A stretch of 64,000 bases of DNA, filler included, from Octopus bimaculoides (Eukaryota): the NCBI RefSeq assembly GCF_001194135.2. It is 5 parts of 5 records of this genome, joined end to end, with 100 filler letters (N's around TTAATTAATTAA, not from the genome) between each part and the next. Parts side by side here need not be neighbours in the genome. Positions count along the whole stretch, not along the records: positions 11,077 to 20,213 come from NC_069007.1; 4 more parts are not named here. One strand, given 5' to 3'. The position numbers and the translations under genes were made by a program. Positions 11,033-20,213 of this stretch are shown here, piece by piece. Positions within the stretch are counted from its first letter, which is position 1. Every line of letters starts with the position of its first letter. The notes beneath the pieces were generated by a model. It was not told where the DNA came from, ran no database searches, and saw only the letters and a list, made by a program, of their open reading frames with translations.

Positions 11033-11100
11033 NNNNNNNNNNNNNNNNNNNNNNNNNNNNNNNNNNNNNNNNNNNNGGGGGGTTAAGTACAATAACTTAC

Positions 11101-11160
11101 CTTGACAGAGTTCAGGGCATGAAACAAAGCAGTGAGTTGTTTTTTGATGGTGGGCTGATT
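11101..11160 (-). CDS. TERT: TERT exon i (after motif 2): NQPTIKKQLTALFHALNSVK
   Basis: Acceptor tctcctttcAG, donor AAG|GTAAGT, 60 nt, phase 0-0. It aligns with the human LTSRVKALFSVLN region. Confidence 0.85.
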
Positions 11161-11234
11161 CTGAAAGGAGATAAAATTCTCTGTAGTGCAGTGTCTTGAG
11201 AAGGAAGAGCTGTAGGTATATGCAGATCATAGTC

Positions 11235-11615
11235 ATCACCATCGTTTAACGTCCACTTTCCATGCTAGCATGGGTTGGACGATTTGATTGAGGACTGGTG
11301 AACCAGATGGCTACACCAGGCCCCAATCTGATTTGGCAGAGTTTCTACAGCTGGATGCCCTTCCTAACGCCAACCACTCCAAGAGTGTAGTGGGTGCTTT
11401 TACGTGCCACCTGCACGAAGGCCAGTCAGGAGGTACTGGCAACGGCCATGCTCAAAATGGTGTATTTCACATGCCACCTGCACAGGAGCCAGTCCAGCGG
11501 CACTAGCAACGATCTCGCTCGAATGTCTTTTCACGTGCCAGGAACGCGAAGCTGTGGCACAAGTACCAGGAAGGCGACGCTGGTAACGATCAGGCTCGAA
11601 CGGTGGTGCCAAAAT
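11235..11615 (-). mobile_element. RTE 3'-tail element (5'-truncated RTE or RTE-tail SINE) with ~62-bp internal repeats and (GAT)n end
   Basis: Homologous to the 3' UTR of the RTE at 59420-59830 and to 48205-48412. Confidence 0.85.
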
Positions 11616-11937
11616 GCATATATATGAAGTTTAAATCCCAGGAGATTCATAACGGATCAAAGCATATCAAAGTGAAGCATGCAACAAACTGGTTAGACAG
11701 AATGATGCAAAACAGACAGTTAAATAATCCATTCTCTAAGCAAGGGGACATCAATGAAAAGTCCACTGCTGTTAGGTAATCCACAATTCCATTAGTATCC
11801 AAAAGTAACCAAAATTATCCATAGTTGAATGAAAATTTAAGCATGACGTAATAAAAACAGATGAATGGGTTATCTGATATTTTCTACTCTAGGCACAAGG
11901 CCTTAAAATTTTTTTTTTGGGGGGGGGGNNNNNNNNN

Positions 11938-12250
11938 NTTATCGACACCGAAAGGATGAAAGGCAAAGTCAACCTCAGTGGAATTTGAACTCAAGAACGT
12001 AAAAACAGACAAAATACTGCTAAGCATTTTGCCCGGCGTGCTAATGTTTCTTATTTCTTTATTGCCCACAAGGGGCTAAACATAGAGGGGACAAACAAAG
12101 ACAGACAAAGGGATTAAGTCGATTACATTGCCCCAAGTGTGTAACTGGTACTTAATTTATCGACACCGAAAGGATGAAAGGCAAAGTCGACCTCGGCGGA
12201 ATTTGAACTCAGAACGTAGCGGCAGACGAAATACCGCTAAGCATTTTGCC
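11938..12250 (-). mobile_element. SINE family B, two adjacent pieces
   Basis: TTATCGACxCCGAAAGGATGAAAGGCAAAGTC block present twice. Confidence 0.8.
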
Positions 12251-12426
12251 CGGCATACATATATATATAACAAAGAAACATGTATTTATTTATTTATGTG
12301 TTTCAGCCAAGTGGCTGCGGTCATGCTGGTGCACCAGCAAGTAATAATAAAATATTTTGACTACAATTCACATAAAAAATTAATCAATAAAAACATTTCA
12401 TAGTAAGAAGTTAAAAGGAAACCTAC

Positions 12427-12549
12427 TCTCTTTGGTGTCATTTTCCAATTCATATTTGTGACTGCTCGTATCGACTGACCTTTGGGTAGGAATCTTACGG
12501 TAGATATACCCAGACTGCTACCCTCTTTAATCGCTTCATCGGCATATGC
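12427..12549 (-). CDS. TERT: TERT exon h (RT motifs 1 and 2): AYADEAIKEGSSLGISTVRFLPKGQSIRAVTNMNWKMTPKR
   Basis: Strong acceptor ttttctctttatAG, donor AGA|GTAGGT, 123 nt, phase 0-0. STVRFLPKGQSIRAVTNM aligns without gaps to human SRLRFIPKPDGLRPIVNM. Confidence 0.93.
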
Positions 12550-12817
12550 CTATAAAGAGAAAATACAAAATAAACAGGGTTCACACACACACACACAAAA
12601 TTGAAAGAATGATAGAAACTAAATTATTGATTTTTCGAATCCTTCACTTGTATGCTTATCAGCAAAAGTTAATTGAAATATAAGATATCGTTAATACAGC
12701 CCTAACATATCAGGAATTCAAACCCAAACTACAATTAAAAATCGTGCAAACAATTAAATACAAGTTCAGAATTAAATAACCAATACAAAATGTGAAAATT
12801 AGTGAAAAAGTTGAAGT

Positions 12818-13017
12818 CTGTGTGGTAAGTAGCTTGCTTACCAACCACCCAACCACATGGTTCCGGGTTCAGTTCCACTGCATGGCACCTTGAGCAAGCC
12901 TCGGGCCGACCGAGGCTATAGTAGAAGACACTTGCCCAAGGTGCCACGAAATAGGACTGAACCCGGAACTATGTGGTTCGTAAGCAAGCTACTTACCACA
13001 CAGCCACTCCTATGCCT
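12818..13017. repeat. Fold-back of two SINE-A heads in opposite orientation
   Basis: The + strand head at 12818-~12897 is complementary to the - strand head ending at 13003-13017. The centre is GCCTCGG-GCCGA-CCGAGGC. Confidence 0.85.
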
Positions 13018-13075
13018 ATTATATATATACATATACATTCATATGTACACACAAGGATGTTTTTGTTTATCTTAC

Positions 13076-13113
13076 CTGTTTTATAGGTGTCATCATTTCT
13101 GAAGAAATCAAAT
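13076..13113 (-). CDS. TERT: TERT exon g (38-nt mini-exon): (D)LISSEMMTPIKQ
   Basis: Acceptor aaaatttcAG, donor CAG|GTAAGA, phase 1-0. It bridges exons f and h. It also gives the same 42-residue spacing as human TERT from five residues into the VWSKL/IWSCV block to the end of motif 1. Confidence 0.85.
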
Positions 13114-14744
13114 CTGAAATTTTGAAAAACAATATATATATATATGTTAAATCTCTGAACGAAGTATTAACAGTAACTGCACGACAAGGTGTAGTATATT
13201 TGCCACTTAAATGTGGCTGACCCCTAAGGGTGGATGTTACTGTTGCTTTTAGCCCCAGGAGAACATCTCCTCCAGCTGGCTATCGACACACATATGTGTC
13301 CTGTCTGTATTTGCAAAGGGGAGTTATCCTTCCCATCTTGATCTGCGATACGTACGGACTCGAGTTTCTGGGTATTTTCCCGTCCTCAGCGCACAACAAT
13401 CGCCGACTTTCGATGCNNNNNNNNNNNNNNNNNNNNNNNNNNNNNNNNNNNNNNNNNNNNNNNNNNNNNNNNNNNNNNNNNNNNNNNNNNNNNNNNNNNN
13501 NNNNNNNNNNNNNNNNNNNNNNNNNNNNNNNNNNNNNNNNNNNNNNNNNNNNNNNNNNNNNNNNNNNNNNNNNNNNNNNNNNNNNNNNNNNNNNNNNNNN
13601 NNNNNNNNNNNNNNNNNNNNNNNNNNNNNNNNNNNNNNNNNNNNNNNNNNNNNNNNNNNNNNNNNNNNNNNNNNNNNNNNNNNNNNNNNNNNNNNNNNNN
13701 NNNNNNNNNNNNNNNNNNNNNNNNNNNNNNNNNNNNNNNNNNNNNNNNNNNNNNNNNNNNNNNNNNNNNNNNNNNNNNNNNNNNNNNNNNNNNNNNNNNN
13801 NNNNNNNNNNNNNNNNNNNNNNNNNNNNNNNNNNNNNNNNNNNNNNNNNNNNNNNNNNNNNNNNNNNNNNNNNNNNNNNNNNNNNNNNNNNNNNNNNNNN
13901 NNNNNNNNNNNNNNNNNNNNNNNNNNNNNNNNNNNNNNNNNNNNNNNNNNNNNNNNNNNNNNNNNNNNNNNNNNNNNNNNNNNNNNNNNNNNNNNNNNNN
14001 NNNNNNNNNNNNNNNNNNNNNNNNNNNNNNNNNNNNNNNNNNNNNNNNNNNNNNNNNNNNNNNNNNNNNNNNNNNNNNNNNNNNNNNNNNNNNNNNNNNN
14101 NNNNNNNNNNNNNNNNNNNNNNNNNNNNNNNNNNNNNNNNNNNNNNNNNNNNNNNNNNNNNNNNNNNNNNNNNNNNNNNNNNNNNNNNNNNNNNNNNNNN
14201 NNNNNNNNNNNNNNNNNNNNNNNNNNNNNNNNNNNNNNNNNNNNNNNNNNNNNNNNNNNNNNNNNNNNNNNNNNNNNNNNNNNNNNNNNNNNNNNNNNNN
14301 NNNNNNNNNNNNNNNTATCTCCCTTGAAAACACGTTCATCGTTTCAACATAACCTAAGGTGGCGTTGCTGTTTCCAAAGTTTATTTTCATTTCTCTATTA
14401 GTAATTTTACTCACGTTGTGTGTGTATCATTCAAGTTTTAGGTAATTGTTGTTTCTTTTTAGTTGTATGGTGAAACTAGCTTGCTGTTGTCATTGATGTA
14501 ATATAACTGCTTCAGATGATTCCTGTTTTTAAAGGAGGGGTGAGTTAAATCACATGGCCAAGATTATGTTTTTGCTGGCGTTGGTTTGGAAAATTGGCCG
14601 ATTTTCAGCATGCGATTTTCTTCTTATAGCCCTGATCTGCCACTCTCAGCAATTCTGCAGAAAAGGTTAAGCATGTTGCTTTATCCTCTCATAAATTGAT
14701 TTTAACACAGGCCACACAAACTGATGGAAAAAGGAACAATCAAT

Positions 14745-15030
14745 TATATCAACCCAGCACGTGACTGCTATTTTATTTTATCAACCCTAGAAGACGAAAA
14801 GACAAAGTCAACCTTGGTGAAATTTGAACTCCAAATTTAAAGAACCAGAACAAATATAACAACGTATTTTGTCCACTTCCCTAACACAGCCACAATATTT
14901 GACTCCTTTATTTTGACTCCAGAAGGGTAAGAAGCAGAGTTAATGTTGAAGGGATTTGAACCCAGAATATAAAGTGTCATAACTAAATACTGCAAGATAT
15001 TTCGTTAACATTAACGATTCTGATAATTCA
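14745..15030 (-). mobile_element. Old SINE family B copies (two, CpG-decayed)
   Basis: AAAGTCAACCTTGGTGAAATTTGAACTC and GGGATTTGAACCCAG blocks. Confidence 0.6.
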
Positions 15031-15114
15031 CTGCTCTTACCAAAGCAGATATTGAGAGTGAGAAGTTTCAACAGTCACCACTACCAAAAGAAAAAAAAAA
15101 GAAAAAAAGCTTAC

Positions 15115-15211
15115 CCTTGACGGCTTGCATCCTGACACATGACCAGATAGGTTTCCTGTAGTAAAATAACCGATTGCGGAAATGACAGCTGTCTGTGACG
15201 TAGAAACTGTC
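15115..15211 (-). CDS. TERT: TERT exon f (T motif): DSFYVTDSCHFRNRLFYYRKPIWSCVRMQAVK
   Basis: Acceptor tatcgtcAG, donor AGG|GTAAGC, 97 nt, phase 0-1. It matches the telomerase T motif (human [22 protein letters not shown]). Confidence 0.93.
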
Positions 15212-15245
15212 CTGACGATATGCCAAAACAAACCCAAAATTAGTG

Positions 15246-15285
<40 letters not shown>

Positions 15286-15439
15286 ATTTTCAATAATAAG
15301 AATAATTAGATAAAATACTCCTAGACATACATCCTACTTTGAAATAAGTAAGACCTATGTCTGAAATATTGAGAATTTATTTTTATTTTTCATCACAGCA
15401 AATACATGTTTATTGAAAAAGATCACCAGTGAGGAAATC

Positions 15440-15814
15440 TTGTTGGCACTCCATCGCTTATGGCGTCGAGGGTTCCAGTTGATCCGATCAACGGAACAGC
15501 CTGCTCGTGAAATTAACGTGCAAGTGGCTGAGCACTCCACAGACACGTGTACCCTTAACGTAGTTCTCGGGGATATTCAGCATGACACAGAGTGTGACAA
15601 GGCTGACCCTTTGAATTACAGAAACAGGAAGAAAGAGCGAGAGAAAGTTGTGGTGAAAGAGTACCACAGGGTTCGCCACCATCCCCTGCCGGAGCCTCGT
15701 GGAGCTTTAGGTGTTTTCGCTCAATAAACACTCACAACGCCCGGTCTGGGAATCGAAACCGTGATCCTATGACCGCGAGTCCGCTGCCCTAACCACTGGA
15801 CCATTGCGCCTCCA
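15440..15814 (-). mobile_element. Full-length tRNA-derived SINE family C with 13-bp target-site duplication, in a TERT intron
   Basis: The head TGTGGAGGCGCAATGGTCCAGTGGTTAGGGCAG..GGTTTCGATTCCC carries A/B boxes. The TSD CAGTGAGGAAATC is at 15427-15439 and 15815-15827. Confidence 0.9.
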
Positions 15815-15933
15815 CAGTGAGGAAATCACATAAGGATCATATTCTCATCCAGAAGCAGACATCCTGAAGCAATGCTAAGTTCAGTTTACCTTGAAGAAGC
15901 AAGGTGAAATTCCATTGAAGAAGAGTACTGTAC

Positions 15934-16044
15934 CTTTATTAATGGAAGTATAACCTCGTTGAAGAGCCACATGATAAGTTGGGTGAGAAACCTACTTCTC
16001 CAAGACTGGGATGGTATTTTCTTCAACCAGGCACAACATGAAGT
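15934..16044 (-). CDS. TERT: TERT exon e: TSCCAWLKKIPSQSWRSRFLTQLIMWLFNEVILPLIK
   Basis: Acceptor tatattttcAG, donor AAG|GTACAG, 111 nt, phase 0-0. It matches the C.WL...L..F..WL....V..LL pattern that precedes the T motif. Confidence 0.9.
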
Positions 16045-16679
16045 CTGAAAATATACAACATTATTGCTTCACAACATGTACAATTATTTCACAGCAACTA
16101 TGCCTCACTAGTCTCAGCAGTTTGAATATGTTCCTTCCCCTTCTGTCCTTTTCTCTGTGCAGCTAAATAAATAAACTCAGAATAAACTCGGCTTGCGAAG
16201 ACATGTTGGGGCAAGCGAAAGCGAAATCGTCATGGCACCTGTGCCCAGCATCGCCTTTCTGGAACTTGTGCCGGACGGGATATGTAAAGACATTCGAGCG
16301 AGATCGTTGCCAGTGCCAGTTTTAAATGATCGGATCAACTGGAACCCTCGACGTCGTAAGCGACGGAGTGCCAACAACAACTTATATATTCTTATATTGT
16401 TTATAAGTTGGATAAACAGAATTTTAAGGAGGTTTTATTAATCCAATGTCTGCATCTGATTATTAACTCATTACTTTTATTAATGAAACCTAATTAGCAT
16501 CTTAGAATCTCAAGTGCCTCTGTAGAAATAACTTAAATGACATGTATGAGCACCAGTGTATAGAAGCAGTGGCTCCCAAGAAGAAATTACTTCCACTCCA
16601 TGCCACCATGGGAACTAGGTGTCAAATGATAATAATGAGAAGAATAACTGTAAGAGAGTTATATCTATCTATCTATCTA

Positions 16680-17385
16680 TCTACTCTTTACTCTTTTACT
16701 TGTTTCAGTCATTTGACTGTGGCCATGCTGGAGCACCGCCTTTAGTCGAGTAAATCAATCCCAGGACTTATTCTTTGGAAGCCTAGTACTTATTCTATCG
16801 GTCTCTTTTTGCCGAACTGTCAAGCGATGTTGGGGGGACAGACACAGACACACAAATATATACACACACATACATACATACNNNNNNNNNNNNNNNNNNN
16901 NNNNNNNNNNNNNNNNNNNNNNNNNNNNNNNNNNNNNNNNNNNNNNNNNNNNNNNNNNNNNNNNNNNNNNNNNNNNNNNNNNNNNNNNNNNNNNNNNNNN
17001 NNNNNNNNNNNNNNNNNNNNNNNNNNNNNNNNNNNNNNNNNNNNNNNNNNNNNNNNNNNNNNNNNNNNNNNNNNNNNNNNNNNNNNNNNNNNNNNNNNNN
17101 NNNNNNNNNNNNNNNNNNNNNNNNNNNNNNNNNNNNNNNNNNNNNNNNNNNNNNNNNNNNNNNNNNNNNNNNNNNNNNNNNNNNNNNNNNNNNNNNNNAT
17201 ATATATATATATATATACATATATACGACAGGCTTCTTTCAGTTTCCGTCTACCAAATCCACTCACAAGGCTTTGGTCGGCCCGAGGCTATAGTAGAAGA
17301 CACTTGCCCAAGGTGCCATGCAGTGGGACTGAACCCAGAACCATGTGGTTGGTAAGCAAGCTACTTACCACACACCCACTCCTAC
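16680..17385 (-). mobile_element. SINE family A, full copy interrupted by an N gap at its internal microsatellite
   Basis: The 3' body (16680-16881) and the head (17199-17385) both match 35686-36125. Confidence 0.85.
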
Positions 17386-17856
17386 TATCTATCTTTCTTT
17401 CTTTCTTTTACTTGTTTCAGTCATTCTGAAATGTACTCATACATCACCATCACATATACAGACATATATCATCATCCACTTTTCCATGGGTCACAGATTT
17501 TCTACAGCTGGATGCCCTTCCTGTCATTAACCTTCATATATTCCGCAAGCAAGGTAATATCTCATGTTTTGATAGGAGAGGGGAAATGAGCAACACTGCT
17601 TGTATGACATTGACACTTGCCTATGACTTTCATGCAACGCCAAGGTAAGGGACACTAACACACACACACACACTTACATTACATAATATGCATTGTACGT
17701 GATGAGGATTGATGATAAATATAATTTAATCAGATCCGAGATACATATAAGTTAGGTCAGCATGGAATATAATTTAATTAGGTGAGTTATAAATAAAATT
17801 TAATAAGATCATTGATAAATATAATTTAATTAGATAAATTGTAAATATAATTTTAC

Positions 17857-17927
17857 CTTCATTCCATGCATAAGTTCTCCAAGACTGAGTTTTTCATATT
17901 TTCCCATGAACACAAACCGTTTAACAT
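17857..17927 (-). CDS. TERT: TERT exon d (QFP region): (H)VKRFVFMGKYEKLSLGELMHGMK
   Basis: 71 nt, phase 1-0, donor AAG|GTAAAA. The acceptor (aattaaAG) is purine-rich. It aligns with human [22 protein letters not shown]. Confidence 0.88.
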
Positions 17928-18089
17928 CTTTAATTTTCATTTTAAGGAAACAATAATGACAACAGCATGGAAAGCAGATGTTAAACAATGACGATGACGA
18001 TGACGACGATGACGACTGTGTGTGTGATTATTACTGACATGATCCTTGAGATATGAAATTCATAGTTATAAATATGAGATAAAGGATAC

Positions 18090-18177
18090 GTTTGAGGAAA
18101 AGGTTTCGGTTGTGATTCGATCCAAACAATTCTACAGGGACCAAACGTTTGACACACACTTTGAGGAAAACATATAC
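18090..18177 (-). CDS. TERT: TERT exon c (QFP): VYVFLKVCVKRLVPVELFGSNHNRNLFLK
   Basis: Acceptor ttttacttttAG, donor AAC|GTATCC, 88 nt, phase 0-1. It aligns with human [29 protein letters not shown]. Confidence 0.92.
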
Positions 18178-18254
18178 CTAAAAGTAAAAGAAGAACAAGA
18201 CCAAGTTGATGATGATGATATTACTGTTGTTGCTTTCAGTGGCTTGTTACAAAT

Positions 18255-18455
18255 TTCTTATTTCTTTATTGCCCACAAGGGGCTAAACATAGAGGGGACA
18301 AACAAGGACAGACAAAGGGATTAAGTCGATTACATCGACCCCAGTGCGTAACTGGTACTTTATTTATCGACCCCCGAAAGGATGAAAGGCAAAGTCGACC
18401 TCAGCGGAATTTGAACTCAGAATGTAACGGCAGACGAAATACCGTTAAGCATTTA
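18255..18455 (-). mobile_element. SINE family B, young copy
   Basis: Near-identical to 12055-12250; CpGs are retained. Confidence 0.85.
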
Positions 18456-18539
18456 ATTTTAATTTTTAATAAATTTTAATTGAGTTTTTACCTGTAATTT
18501 TGGATTTTTATCCCTAATATATATATATAATACAAAGAA

Positions 18540-18790
18540 TATGTATGCATGTATACCCACATATATGTACATACTTACATCTACATGTGTATATAGATGC
18601 ATATCAGGGTACAGGACATTAGAAAAATGAACTACAGACAATGGAACGAACACATAGGAAAACAGATAGCCTCTTGGAATTAATCCTTCGTCAGCTGCCT
18701 CTATTCTAACTAGACATTTCGAAGATAAGGCAGAACGTACTCTAGAATAGTCTCTTCCTGAGCAGTGGATCGACCCACTAAACACACACA
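18540..18790 (-). repeat. Dispersed repeat, also at ~20560-20730 (-) and ~47745-48020 (+); possibly a Penelope terminal-repeat relic
   Basis: Shared block CAGCTGATGAAGG...CCTGTACCC(A/G)GATATGCATCTATATATACATGTAGATGTAGG. The Penelope assignment is inference. Confidence 0.55.
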
Positions 18791-18918
18791 CACACTGTCT
18801 GAAAAGAAAGACAAGATGTCCACCTCAATTGTAACATCACTGCCTGATTAATTAATTAACACTGTACTGAGATGGAGATAAACGGCAATAATCAGAAGAA
18901 AGAATATAAAACACTCAC

Positions 18919-19040
18919 CTGTTGATGGGACACAACATCACAAACTAATCTTCTGATGGTTGGAGCCTTGCGCAGATGGCATGATTTTTTGTTAGAAACC
19001 ACGCGATTTGTGTCAATACTTCCCACCTTTCGATGCGGTG
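18919..19040 (-). CDS. TERT: TERT exon b (CP-QFP linker): (A)PHRKVGSIDTNRVVSNKKSCHLRKAPTIRRLVCDVVSHQQ
   Basis: Acceptor tttctgttgtAG, donor CAG|GTGAGT, 122 nt, phase 1-0. Only one frame is open. SHQQ|VYVF reproduces the S..QVYGF start of QFP. Confidence 0.88.
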
Positions 19041-19235
19041 CTACAACAGAAATATATCATACAGAAGGTTGATAATGGTGGTGGTGGTGGTGGTGCTAAT
19101 CATAGCTATGATGATGATAGCAGAGTGGTGATAGTGATGTGATGAGAATAGTTGTTGTTAACTATAAAACTGAACAATTTCCAAGGCTACCCACTAGGTT
19201 TTAAATAAACTTTGTGACTAGATTGCTGTGCTTAC

Positions 19236-19345
19236 CACTTGAATGACTTGTTTTCTTATTTAGATGTGTATAAAGGTTGAGCGATTTAGCATTTTCTGTG
19301 CTTATGGCACAATAACGGTCCAAAATCTTCAAGTAATAACATTTT
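19236..19345 (-). CDS. TERT: TERT exon a (CP motif): KCYYLKILDRYCAISTENAKSLNLYTHLNKKTSHSS
   Basis: Acceptor tattatttcAG, donor GTG|GTAAGC, 110 nt, phase 2-1. KCYYLKILDRYCAI aligns with the human CP motif QCPYGVLLKTHCPL. Confidence 0.85.
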
Positions 19346-19349
19346 CTGA

Positions 19350-19393
<44 letters not shown>

Positions 19394-19395
<2 letters not shown>

Positions 19396-19624
19396 TTCAG
19401 ACAAATACATAGCAAAAACACCAGGACTTACAAATATATATAACATACAGAAAATTGCACTACTGGGTACTGCACACATCCTATGCAAAACACTTTCAAT
19501 ACAGTAACCATAAGAGCACCACAGCAAACCACAGCACATACCCAAGGCGCACAGAGCTGCGCTTGGTAGTGAAGTGAAAGCACATTATAAAAATAAAACT
19601 ACTGAATAATAATAATAATAATAA
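19394..19624 (+). mobile_element. Short 5'-truncated R4/Dong-like LINE 3' end embedded in (TAA)n
   Basis: Encodes KTPGLTNIYNIQKIALLGTAHILCKTLSIQ*, the QK..LLGTA.IL C-terminal signature of these elements. TAA repeats flank both sides. Confidence 0.8.
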
Positions 19625-20037
19625 ATAACAACAACGACAATTTTACTTTTCATCTTCCTGGGGTTGATAGAGTACCAATCCTGAGAAGAAGCTTGGCTAA
19701 ATTGTTAGAACATTGGGCAAGGTACTTTGCACTATCATTTGTGGTTCTGCATTTTAGTGACAGCACTCGTGGCAATGCTGTAGCCAGATGTATAGCACTT
19801 GCATCTCCCTTGGAGAACATAAGTGATGTGAAGAGTGGAGTCTGCTAGTCTTCCTTATGAAACAAACTGACAATTTGGAAAGGAATTTTCTAAAGTAACA
19901 TCAGACATTGTAATGCCTTAGATTGCAGATTATTAAAATTTGAAGAAATTTGTTATGACAATATACTTAGTCCAGCGCTCCACATTTCGGTCGCTCTCAT
20001 TCCTTACTCTAACAAATCATAGACAAATGAACAAAAA

Positions 20038-20213
20038 TAGGTGTAGGAGTGGCTGTGTTGTAAGTAGCTTGCTTACCAACCACATGGTTCCGGGTTCAGT
20101 CCCACTGTGTGGCACCTTGGGCAAGTGTCTTCTACTATAGCCTCGGGCTGACCAAAGCCTTGTGAGTGGATTTGGTAGACGGAAACTGAAAGAAGACTGT
20201 CGTATATATGTAT
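20038..20213 (+). mobile_element. SINE family A head
   Basis: Matches 35686-35850. Confidence 0.85.

What the first reader, a model, noticed from the sequence alone, without database searches (positions are those of the whole stretch)
11101..19345. Hidden telomerase (TERT) gene segment: nine mini-exons invisible to the ORF track
Seen: nine minus-strand exons (110, 122, 88, 71, 111, 97, 38, 123 and 60 nt; 820 nt total) have canonical AG/GT ends and their phases chain without conflict (2-1, 1-0, 0-1, 1-0, 0-0, 0-1, 1-0, 0-0, 0-0). The spliced product is KCYYLKILDRYCAISTENAKSLNLYTHLNKKTSHSSAPHRKVGSIDTNRVVSNKKSCHLRKAPTIRRLVCDVVSHQQVYVFLKVCVKRLVPVELFGSNHNRNLFLKHVKRFVFMGKYEKLSLGELMHGMKTSCCAWLKKIPSQSWRSRFLTQLIMWLFNEVILPLIKDSFYVTDSCHFRNRLFYYRKPIWSCVRMQAVKDLISSEMMTPIKQAYADEAIKEGSSLGISTVRFLPKGQSIRAVTNMNWKMTPKRNQPTIKKQLTALFHALNSVK. 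Established: CP, QFP and T followed by RT motifs 1 and 2 is the telomerase-specific order. Inference: this is the octopus TERT TRBD plus fingers. Automated annotation could easily miss or fragment it.
Basis: partly seen in the sequence, partly recalled or inferred. Interest (0 to 1): 0.85.

Follow-up and report, generated by a model that had tools for sequence, protein, structure and literature searches.

The report
Cephalopod telomerase (TERT) gene segment
The nine small minus-strand exons are real and encode the RNA-binding domain and the first reverse-transcriptase motifs of telomerase from a cephalopod. This gene is expected in almost every animal, so the reading is correct but ordinary.

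Summary
Nine minus-strand exons (110, 122, 88, 71, 111, 97, 38, 123 and 60 nt) each have AG/GT ends, and their phases chain into one open 273-residue frame.

The product is TERT:
- Pfam Telomerase_RBD scores E = 4e-36.
- Human TERT structures score E = 1.7e-32, over residues 456-644.
- The best relative is cuttlefish TERT: 42% identity over the whole peptide, E = 5e-74.

The exon structure has independent support. In the limpet Patella vulgata TERT gene the matching exons are 88, 111, 97 and 38 nt, identical in length. Two more (132 and 57 nt) differ from the window's by whole codons. The exon-4 homologue's acceptor is ambiguous.

The three N gaps lie in introns 4, 6 and 8. No coding sequence is missing across them.

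"Hidden" means only that eukaryotic exons (in-frame ORFs of 21-52 aa) fall below a bacterial ORF threshold.

No octopod protein containing these exons turned up in two searches of 5.8 billion proteins. The worry about annotation is therefore plausible but unproven.

The catalytic motifs A-E, the TEN domain and the C-terminal extension lie outside the piece.

Verdict: an ordinary housekeeping gene, of low interest.

The parts
19236..19345 (-). Exon 1 of the segment (110 nt, phase 2-1). It holds the second half of the CP motif (KCYYLKILDRYCA) and the start of a variable linker.
   Evidence: AG/GT ends. Aligns to cuttlefish TERT 245-280. C2, L8 and C12 fall in conserved columns of the 12-TERT alignment. 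The acceptor has the same place and phase as in the Patella TERT gene. The donor is not checked by homology.
18919..19040 (-). Exon 2 (122 nt, phase 1-0). It holds the variable linker and the start of QFP (…TIRRLVCDVVSHQQ).
   Evidence: AG/GT ends. The last ~25 residues align to cuttlefish and human TERT. The acceptor lies in a poorly conserved stretch and rests on the open frame and splice signal only.
18090..18177 (-). Exon 3 (88 nt, phase 0-1). QFP motif: VYVFLKVCVKRLVPVELFGSNHNRNLFLK.
   Evidence: Start of the Pfam Telomerase_RBD match. The Patella homologous exon is also 88 nt with the same phases.
17857..17927 (-). Exon 4 (71 nt, phase 1-0). QFP motif continued: HVKRFVFMGKYEKLSLGELMHGMK.
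   Evidence: The Patella homologue ends at the same residue (…NGIK|gt). The acceptor has the weakest pyrimidine tract of the nine.
15934..16044 (-). Exon 5 (111 nt, phase 0-0). End of QFP and the helix before T: TSCCAWLKKIPS…VILPLIK.
   Evidence: The Patella exon is 111 nt with identical boundaries.
15115..15211 (-). Exon 6 (97 nt, phase 0-1). T motif: DSFYVTDSCHFRNRLFYYRKPIWSCVRMQAVK.
   Evidence: End of the Pfam match. F170, Y171, T173 and W190 are invariant in 12 TERTs. The Patella exon is 97 nt.
13076..13113 (-). Exon 7 (38 nt, phase 1-0). Linker between TRBD and fingers: DLISSEMMTPIKQ.
   Evidence: Aligns without a gap to human 591-603. The Patella exon is 38 nt.
12427..12549 (-). Exon 8 (123 nt, phase 0-0). 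RT motif 1 and the start of motif 2: …LGISTVRFLPKGQSIRAVTNM…
   Evidence: R231, P234, K235 and R240 are invariant in 12 TERTs. The Patella exon is 132 nt with the same phases.
11101..11160 (-). Exon 9 (60 nt, phase 0-0). Rest of motif 2: NQPTIKKQLTALFHALNSVK. The gene continues beyond the piece's edge.
   Evidence: Aligns to Patella 132-150 and cuttlefish 497-516. The Patella exon is 57 nt and its donor falls at the same residue.

Best explanation
This is a middle segment of the single-copy nuclear gene for telomerase reverse transcriptase (TERT) of a cephalopod, probably an octopod. It lies on the minus strand and is split into nine short exons by eight introns of 162 to about 2000 nt that are full of SINE-like repeats. 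The 273 residues cover the second half of the CP motif, a variable linker, the QFP and T motifs (the telomerase RNA-binding domain), and RT motifs 1 and 2 (the fingers). By inference from solved telomerases, the TRBD holds the telomerase RNA and sets the template boundary. The motif-1 lysine and motif-2 arginine contact the incoming nucleotide. The full enzyme adds telomeric repeats to chromosome ends. The TEN domain lies upstream and motifs A-E plus the C-terminal extension lie downstream, all outside this piece.
For: Shown here:
- The exon chain, splice signals and single open frame are as described.
- Pfam Telomerase_RBD scores E = 4e-36 and covers profile positions 1-131 of 133.
- Human TERT 7qxa scores E = 1.7e-32, aligned over 456-644. 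The other 15 PDB hits are also TERTs.
- The best relative among 150 TERT representatives is cuttlefish TERT: 42% identity over residues 2-273, E = 5e-74.
- All 14 invariant columns of a 12-species TERT alignment are kept.
- tblastn with the full-length cuttlefish TERT hits seven of the nine exons, in order, on the minus strand.
- Exon lengths and phases match the Patella vulgata TERT gene: 88, 111, 97 and 38 nt are identical, and 123 vs 132 and 60 vs 57 differ by whole codons. The exon-1 acceptor is at the same place and phase.
- No exon overlaps a repeat.
The motif order CP, QFP, T, 1, 2 is the one given for TERT in PMC5405514.
Against: Only about a fifth to a quarter of the protein is in the piece (the full-length cuttlefish TERT is 1267 aa), so an intact catalytic centre cannot be shown. 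The exon-1 donor and exon-2 acceptor lie in a poorly conserved linker and rest on the open frame and signals alone. The species is not verified.
Confidence: 0.93

Rival explanations
1. It is a TERT pseudogene or a partial duplicated copy that is no longer functional, and the working gene lies elsewhere.
For: Only part of the gene is visible. No expression data could be obtained. No octopod protein with these exons was found in public protein sets.
Against: All nine exons are open. All splice signals are intact. All 14 invariant TERT columns are kept, and the exon structure is conserved with a limpet. A decaying copy would be expected to have lost some of these.
Confidence: 0.05
2. It is the reverse transcriptase of a retroelement related to telomerase (for example a Penelope-like element), not the cellular TERT.
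For: Penelope-like RTs are the closest relatives of TERT, and their remnants exist in cephalopod genomes (PMC8557442).
Against: The strongest match is to the TRBD. As far as I know, Penelope-like elements lack that domain. The sequence is split by eight introns at positions shared with a limpet TERT gene. It is not repeated within the piece.
Confidence: 0.01
3. It is a real TERT gene, but one or two of the proposed boundaries (exon-1 donor, exon-2 acceptor, exon-4 acceptor) are wrong or alternatively spliced.
For: Residues 13-66 align to cuttlefish TERT only with two gaps, and alone they find no TERT in the PDB. The exon-4 acceptor has a weak pyrimidine tract. The frames stay open for 34 codons upstream of exon 4 and 56 codons upstream of exon 7.
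Against: The signals used are canonical, and the chain closes in phase only with these boundaries. Alignment lengths to human and limpet TERT fit exons 4 and 7 exactly.
Confidence: 0.15

Closest known systems
TERT of the cuttlefish Acanthosepion (Sepia) pharaonis (CAE1228151.1; P0015) and a full-length cuttlefish transcript product (P0169, 1267 aa)
   Same: It aligns over the whole 273 residues with the same motif order: 42% identity, 64% positives, E = 5e-74. It is the best of 150 TERT representatives.
   Different: Identity is only 42%, with two gaps in the linker after the CP motif. This window is therefore from a different, distant cephalopod lineage. The cuttlefish gene structure could not be fetched.
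Human TERT (PDB 7qxa, 7trd, 7bg9)
   Same: Residues 73-253 align to human 456-644 with one 8-residue gap. The QFP and T motifs and the motif-1 Lys and motif-2 Arg are conserved.
   Different: The T motif reads FYVTDS instead of FYVTET, an E-to-D change shared with the Patella, Nucella and Pomacea TERTs. From memory, not tested here: the human gene carries most of this region in one large exon, whereas here it is split into nine.
TERT gene of the limpet Patella vulgata (GCA_932274485.2, locus L003)
   Same: The exon-intron structure matches. Homologous exons of 88, 111, 97 and 38 nt are identical in length and phase. Two others differ by whole codons. The acceptor before the CP-motif cysteine is shared.
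   Different: Protein identity is 38% over residues 141-273. The limpet's exon-1 homologue is shorter (53 vs 110 nt). The limpet annotation splits the gene into two models.

Membership tests
Telomerase reverse transcriptase (TERT) | Telomerase RNA-binding domain (Pfam PF12009) above the curated threshold | tested here: met
   124.5 bits against a cut-off of 25, E = 4e-36, covering profile positions 1-131 of 133.
Telomerase reverse transcriptase (TERT) | T motif (FYxT… RNRLFYYRK..W) directly before the RT motifs | tested here: met
   The sequence is DSFYVTDSCHFRNRLFYYRKPIW. F170, Y171, T173 and W190 are invariant across 12 TERTs.
Telomerase reverse transcriptase (TERT) | QFP motif | tested here: met
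   Residues 77-167 align without gaps to the cuttlefish, limpet and brachiopod TERTs, and with one short gap to the vertebrate and sea-anemone TERTs. G96, N100, L122, L137 and W156 are invariant.
Telomerase reverse transcriptase (TERT) | CP motif | tested here: inconclusive
   Only the second half (C2-x-Y4-x-x-I-L8-x-x-x-C12) is present, at the start of exon 1. The first half (PL…LL.NH) must lie in an upstream exon that I could not identify in 19346-20213.
Telomerase reverse transcriptase (TERT) | RT fingers: motif 1 (RFxPK) and motif 2 (xRxI/V) with the conserved Lys and Arg | tested here: met
   The sequence is VRFLPKGQSIRAVTNM. R231, P234, K235 and R240 are invariant.
Telomerase reverse transcriptase (TERT) | Catalytic motifs A, B', C (Asp triad), D and E, plus the C-terminal extension | not testable with these tools
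   These lie beyond position 11077, outside the piece supplied.
Telomerase reverse transcriptase (TERT) | N-terminal TEN domain | not testable with these tools
   It lies upstream of the piece. It is present in the full-length cuttlefish transcript product P0169.
Telomerase reverse transcriptase (TERT) | A cellular, intron-containing gene with orthologous intron positions, not a retroelement copy | tested here: met
   Intron positions and phases are shared with the Patella vulgata TERT gene. No exon overlaps a repeat.
Telomerase reverse transcriptase (TERT) | Transcribed and spliced as modelled; telomerase activity | not testable with these tools
Activity needs a bench assay.

The most novel reading that the evidence does not exclude
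Octopod TERT may have escaped every public gene annotation. No protein containing these exons was found among 5.8 billion clustered sequences, although cuttlefish, limpet, oyster and snail TERTs are there. If so, this would be the first octopod TERT model. It shows that cephalopods keep the intron-rich ancestral gene structure and a CP-like motif that a 2017 survey reported as lost in molluscs. It would also give a handle for studying telomerase in short-lived animals that breed once and die.
Probability: 0.35. Interest if true: 0.3.

Novelty: new member of a known kind. Interest (0 to 1): 0.2.

Why it matters
TERT is a universal eukaryotic gene, so finding it in a cephalopod changes no concept. 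The practical value is modest. It provides a checked exon model for a gene that annotation pipelines handle badly: the limpet copy is split into two models, and the cuttlefish model lacks its N-terminus. It would serve anyone studying telomere maintenance, ageing or regeneration in octopuses. It also adds a data point that the intron-rich TERT structure seen in the oyster is shared by limpets and cephalopods, and so is probably ancestral for molluscs.

Tried and rejected
I searched with the Patella TERT instead and compared the 150 hits locally.
- The cuttlefish TERT gene structure could not be fetched, because the protein is not on record by exact look-up.
- Upstream exon search in 19346-20213: of 154 AG…GT open candidates, only one (19889-19767, ending …VLYIWLQHCH) loosely resembles the first half of the CP motif. 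It has a weak donor (GTGCTG) and gets no tblastn support from cuttlefish TERT. I do not count it.
- Residues 1-91 alone find no TERT in the PDB. Support for exon 1 comes only from the cuttlefish and multi-species alignments and from the conserved acceptor.
- The Rfam scan and tRNA scan of the piece found nothing meaningful, only a mir-297 hit far below threshold in an AT/TA-rich stretch.
- Literature searches found no paper on cephalopod TERT.
- The retroelement and chance-ORF readings are rejected, as set out under the rival explanations.
Full report
**The observation**

I then located the exact boundaries. The nine exons are:

| Exon | Coordinates | Length (nt) |
|---|---|---|
| 1 | 19345-19236 | 110 |
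| 2 | 19040-18919 | 122 |
| 3 | 18177-18090 | 88 |
| 4 | 17927-17857 | 71 |
| 5 | 16044-15934 | 111 |
| 6 | 15211-15115 | 97 |
| 7 | 13113-13076 | 38 |
| 8 | 12549-12427 | 123 |
| 9 | 11160-11101 | 60 |

Every exon is preceded by AG and followed by GT. All but exon 4 have a clear pyrimidine tract. Joined, they make 820 nt. Exon G+C (40%) is barely above intron G+C (39%), so composition gives nothing away.

**The gaps**

The three runs of N lie in intron 8 (11929-11938), intron 6 (13417-14315) and intron 4 (16882-17198). Three results show that nothing coding is lost in them.
- The residues on either side of each gap align without a break to human TERT, limpet TERT, cuttlefish TERT and a 12-species alignment.
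- The Patella vulgata TERT gene has no extra exon between the homologues of exons 4/5, 6/7 and 8/9.
- The exons keep their order and strand across all three gaps, so the scaffold is consistent.

**What it is**

The peptide matches Pfam Telomerase_RBD at 124.5 bits (cut-off 25), E = 4e-36, over almost the whole profile. All 16 PDB sequences found are TERTs. Human TERT is best, at E = 1.7e-32, with query residues 73-253 aligned to human 456-644.

A word-indexed search of 5.8 billion proteins with the peptide returned only Patella vulgata TERT, at 38% identity. I then ran a full HMMER search of 1.84 billion representatives with that protein and compared the 150 best hits locally with the peptide. 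The closest is P0015, at 42% identity over residues 2-273. Its sources name it TERT of the cuttlefish Acanthosepion (Sepia) pharaonis. The pairwise E-value is 5e-74. Gastropod, bivalve and brachiopod TERTs follow at 30-40% identity and much lower scores. The source is therefore a cephalopod that is not close to cuttlefish. That fits an octopod, though I could not verify the species.

**Motifs**

In a 12-TERT alignment (cephalopod, fish, lungfish, sea anemone, brachiopod, gastropods, oyster), all 14 invariant columns are kept.
- QFP spans exons 2-5.
- T (FYVTDS…RNRLFYYRKPIW) is in exon 6.
- Motif 1 (VRFLPK) and the start of motif 2 (SIRAVTN) are in exon 8.
- The rest of motif 2 is in exon 9.
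- Exon 1 starts in the middle of the CP motif: KCYYLKILDRYCA against the consensus KCxYxxLLxxxCP.

The first half of CP must be in an upstream exon. I found no convincing candidate in the 868 nt of the piece that lie upstream. The order CP, QFP, T, 1, 2 is the TERT order given in PMC5405514.

**Independent support for the exon model**

I therefore used conservation of gene structure instead. I fetched the Patella vulgata TERT locus and mapped its exons.

| Window exon | Window length (nt) | Patella length (nt) | Agreement |
|---|---|---|---|
| 1 | 110 | 53 | same acceptor place and phase |
| 3 | 88 | 88 | same length and phases |
| 4 | 71 | 81-89 | same donor; Patella acceptor ambiguous |
| 5 | 111 | 111 | same length and phases |
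| 6 | 97 | 97 | same length and phases |
| 7 | 38 | 38 | same length and phases |
| 8 | 123 | 132 | same phases, whole-codon difference |
| 9 | 60 | 57 | same phases, whole-codon difference |

The exon-1 acceptor is cag|A AAA TGT in the window and cag|A AAG TTT in Patella. These shared positions check most of the proposed splice sites. Only the exon-1 donor, both ends of exon 2 and the exon-4 acceptor are left resting on signals and the open frame alone.

**Rivals**

- **Retroelement RT.** The match is to the telomerase-specific TRBD, the sequence has introns at orthologous places, and no exon overlaps a repeat. This reading is excluded.
- **Pseudogene.** With only about a fifth to a quarter of the gene in view it cannot be formally excluded. 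Nothing points to it: there are no stops, no frameshifts, no lost signals and no lost invariant residues.
- **Misplaced boundaries.** Individual boundaries in the variable linker could differ from the model.

**"Hidden"**

The in-frame bacterial-style ORFs over the exons are 21-52 aa, all below the default 60-aa threshold. The gene really is invisible to such a list, but that is true of any intron-rich animal gene.

The more interesting question is whether public annotation has it. Two searches failed to find any octopod protein: one with the peptide and one with full-length cuttlefish TERT. Both did find TERTs of other phyla. TERT annotation is visibly poor in relatives. The Patella gene is split into a 597-aa and a 469-aa model inside the exon-4 homologue. 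The cuttlefish model (973 aa) lacks the TEN domain and about 294 N-terminal residues that are present in a transcript-derived protein of 1267 aa. I could not inspect the source genome's own annotation, however, and the word-indexed search has limited sensitivity.

**Comparison and novelty**

This is an ordinary orthologue of a universal gene. Two small points go beyond the expected.
- The gene is intron-rich, with eight introns in 820 nt of coding sequence, like the oyster's (27 introns). That contrasts with Aplysia and Biomphalaria, which have 5 and 3 (PMC5405514). The structure is shared with a limpet, so it is probably ancestral for molluscs.
- A CP-like motif is present in cephalopod, gastropod and oyster TERTs in my alignment. 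The same paper states that molluscs have lost CP.

Neither point changes how telomerase is understood. Interest is low.

Noticed in passing
window 15440-15490 and 16327-16377: A 51-nt inverted repeat, 94% complementary, brackets exon 5 (15934-16044). In the pre-mRNA the two arms could pair across the exon. In principle that could favour exon skipping, back-splicing or A-to-I editing. Exon 5 is 111 nt, so skipping it would stay in frame. This is pure speculation; nothing was tested.
   Followed up: no
window 11939-12254, 14740-14963, 18254-18454; and 12818-13020, 17215-17399, 20030-20213: Two families of interspersed SINE-like repeats fill the introns, in both orientations, at 76-95% identity between copies. 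One family has a palindromic pair at 12818-12898 / 12931-13003. ARAGORN and Rfam find no tRNA in them.
   Followed up: partly
L003 1102-9932 and 10001-21230 (Patella vulgata, OW026355.2): The limpet TERT gene is annotated as two adjacent gene models: 597 aa with a weak TEN hit, and 469 aa with TRBD plus RT. The break falls inside the homologue of window exon 4, and the second model starts at an internal Met (MNGIK). This looks like an annotation artefact.
   Followed up: partly
P0015 vs P0169 (cuttlefish TERT): The deposited Acanthosepion pharaonis TERT model (973 aa) lacks the TEN domain and about 294 N-terminal residues. Both are present in a 93%-identical protein from an assembled transcript (1267 aa, Logan SRR8281664).
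   Followed up: no
alignment A1, columns around window peptide residues 1-13: A CP-like motif (PL…LL.NH(R/K)KCxYxxLLxxxCP) is recognisable in the cephalopod, Nucella, Haliotis, Pomacea and Saccostrea TERTs. PMC5405514 states that molluscs have lost the CP motif. The disagreement may come down to definitions or to the gene models used.
   Followed up: partly
window 19767-19889, minus strand: An open AG…GT candidate exon ends in …REMQVLYIWLQHCH. Joined to exon 1 it would read …LQHCHEKCYY, loosely like the first half of the CP motif (L…L..H..C.Y). The donor is weak (GTGCTG), the stretch sits next to SINE-like sequence, and cuttlefish TERT gives it no tblastn support.
   Followed up: partly
window 11907-11938: The 10-N gap is preceded by a T11 G12 homopolymer junction and followed at once by the start of a SINE-like copy. 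This is the kind of place where short-read assemblies break.
   Followed up: no
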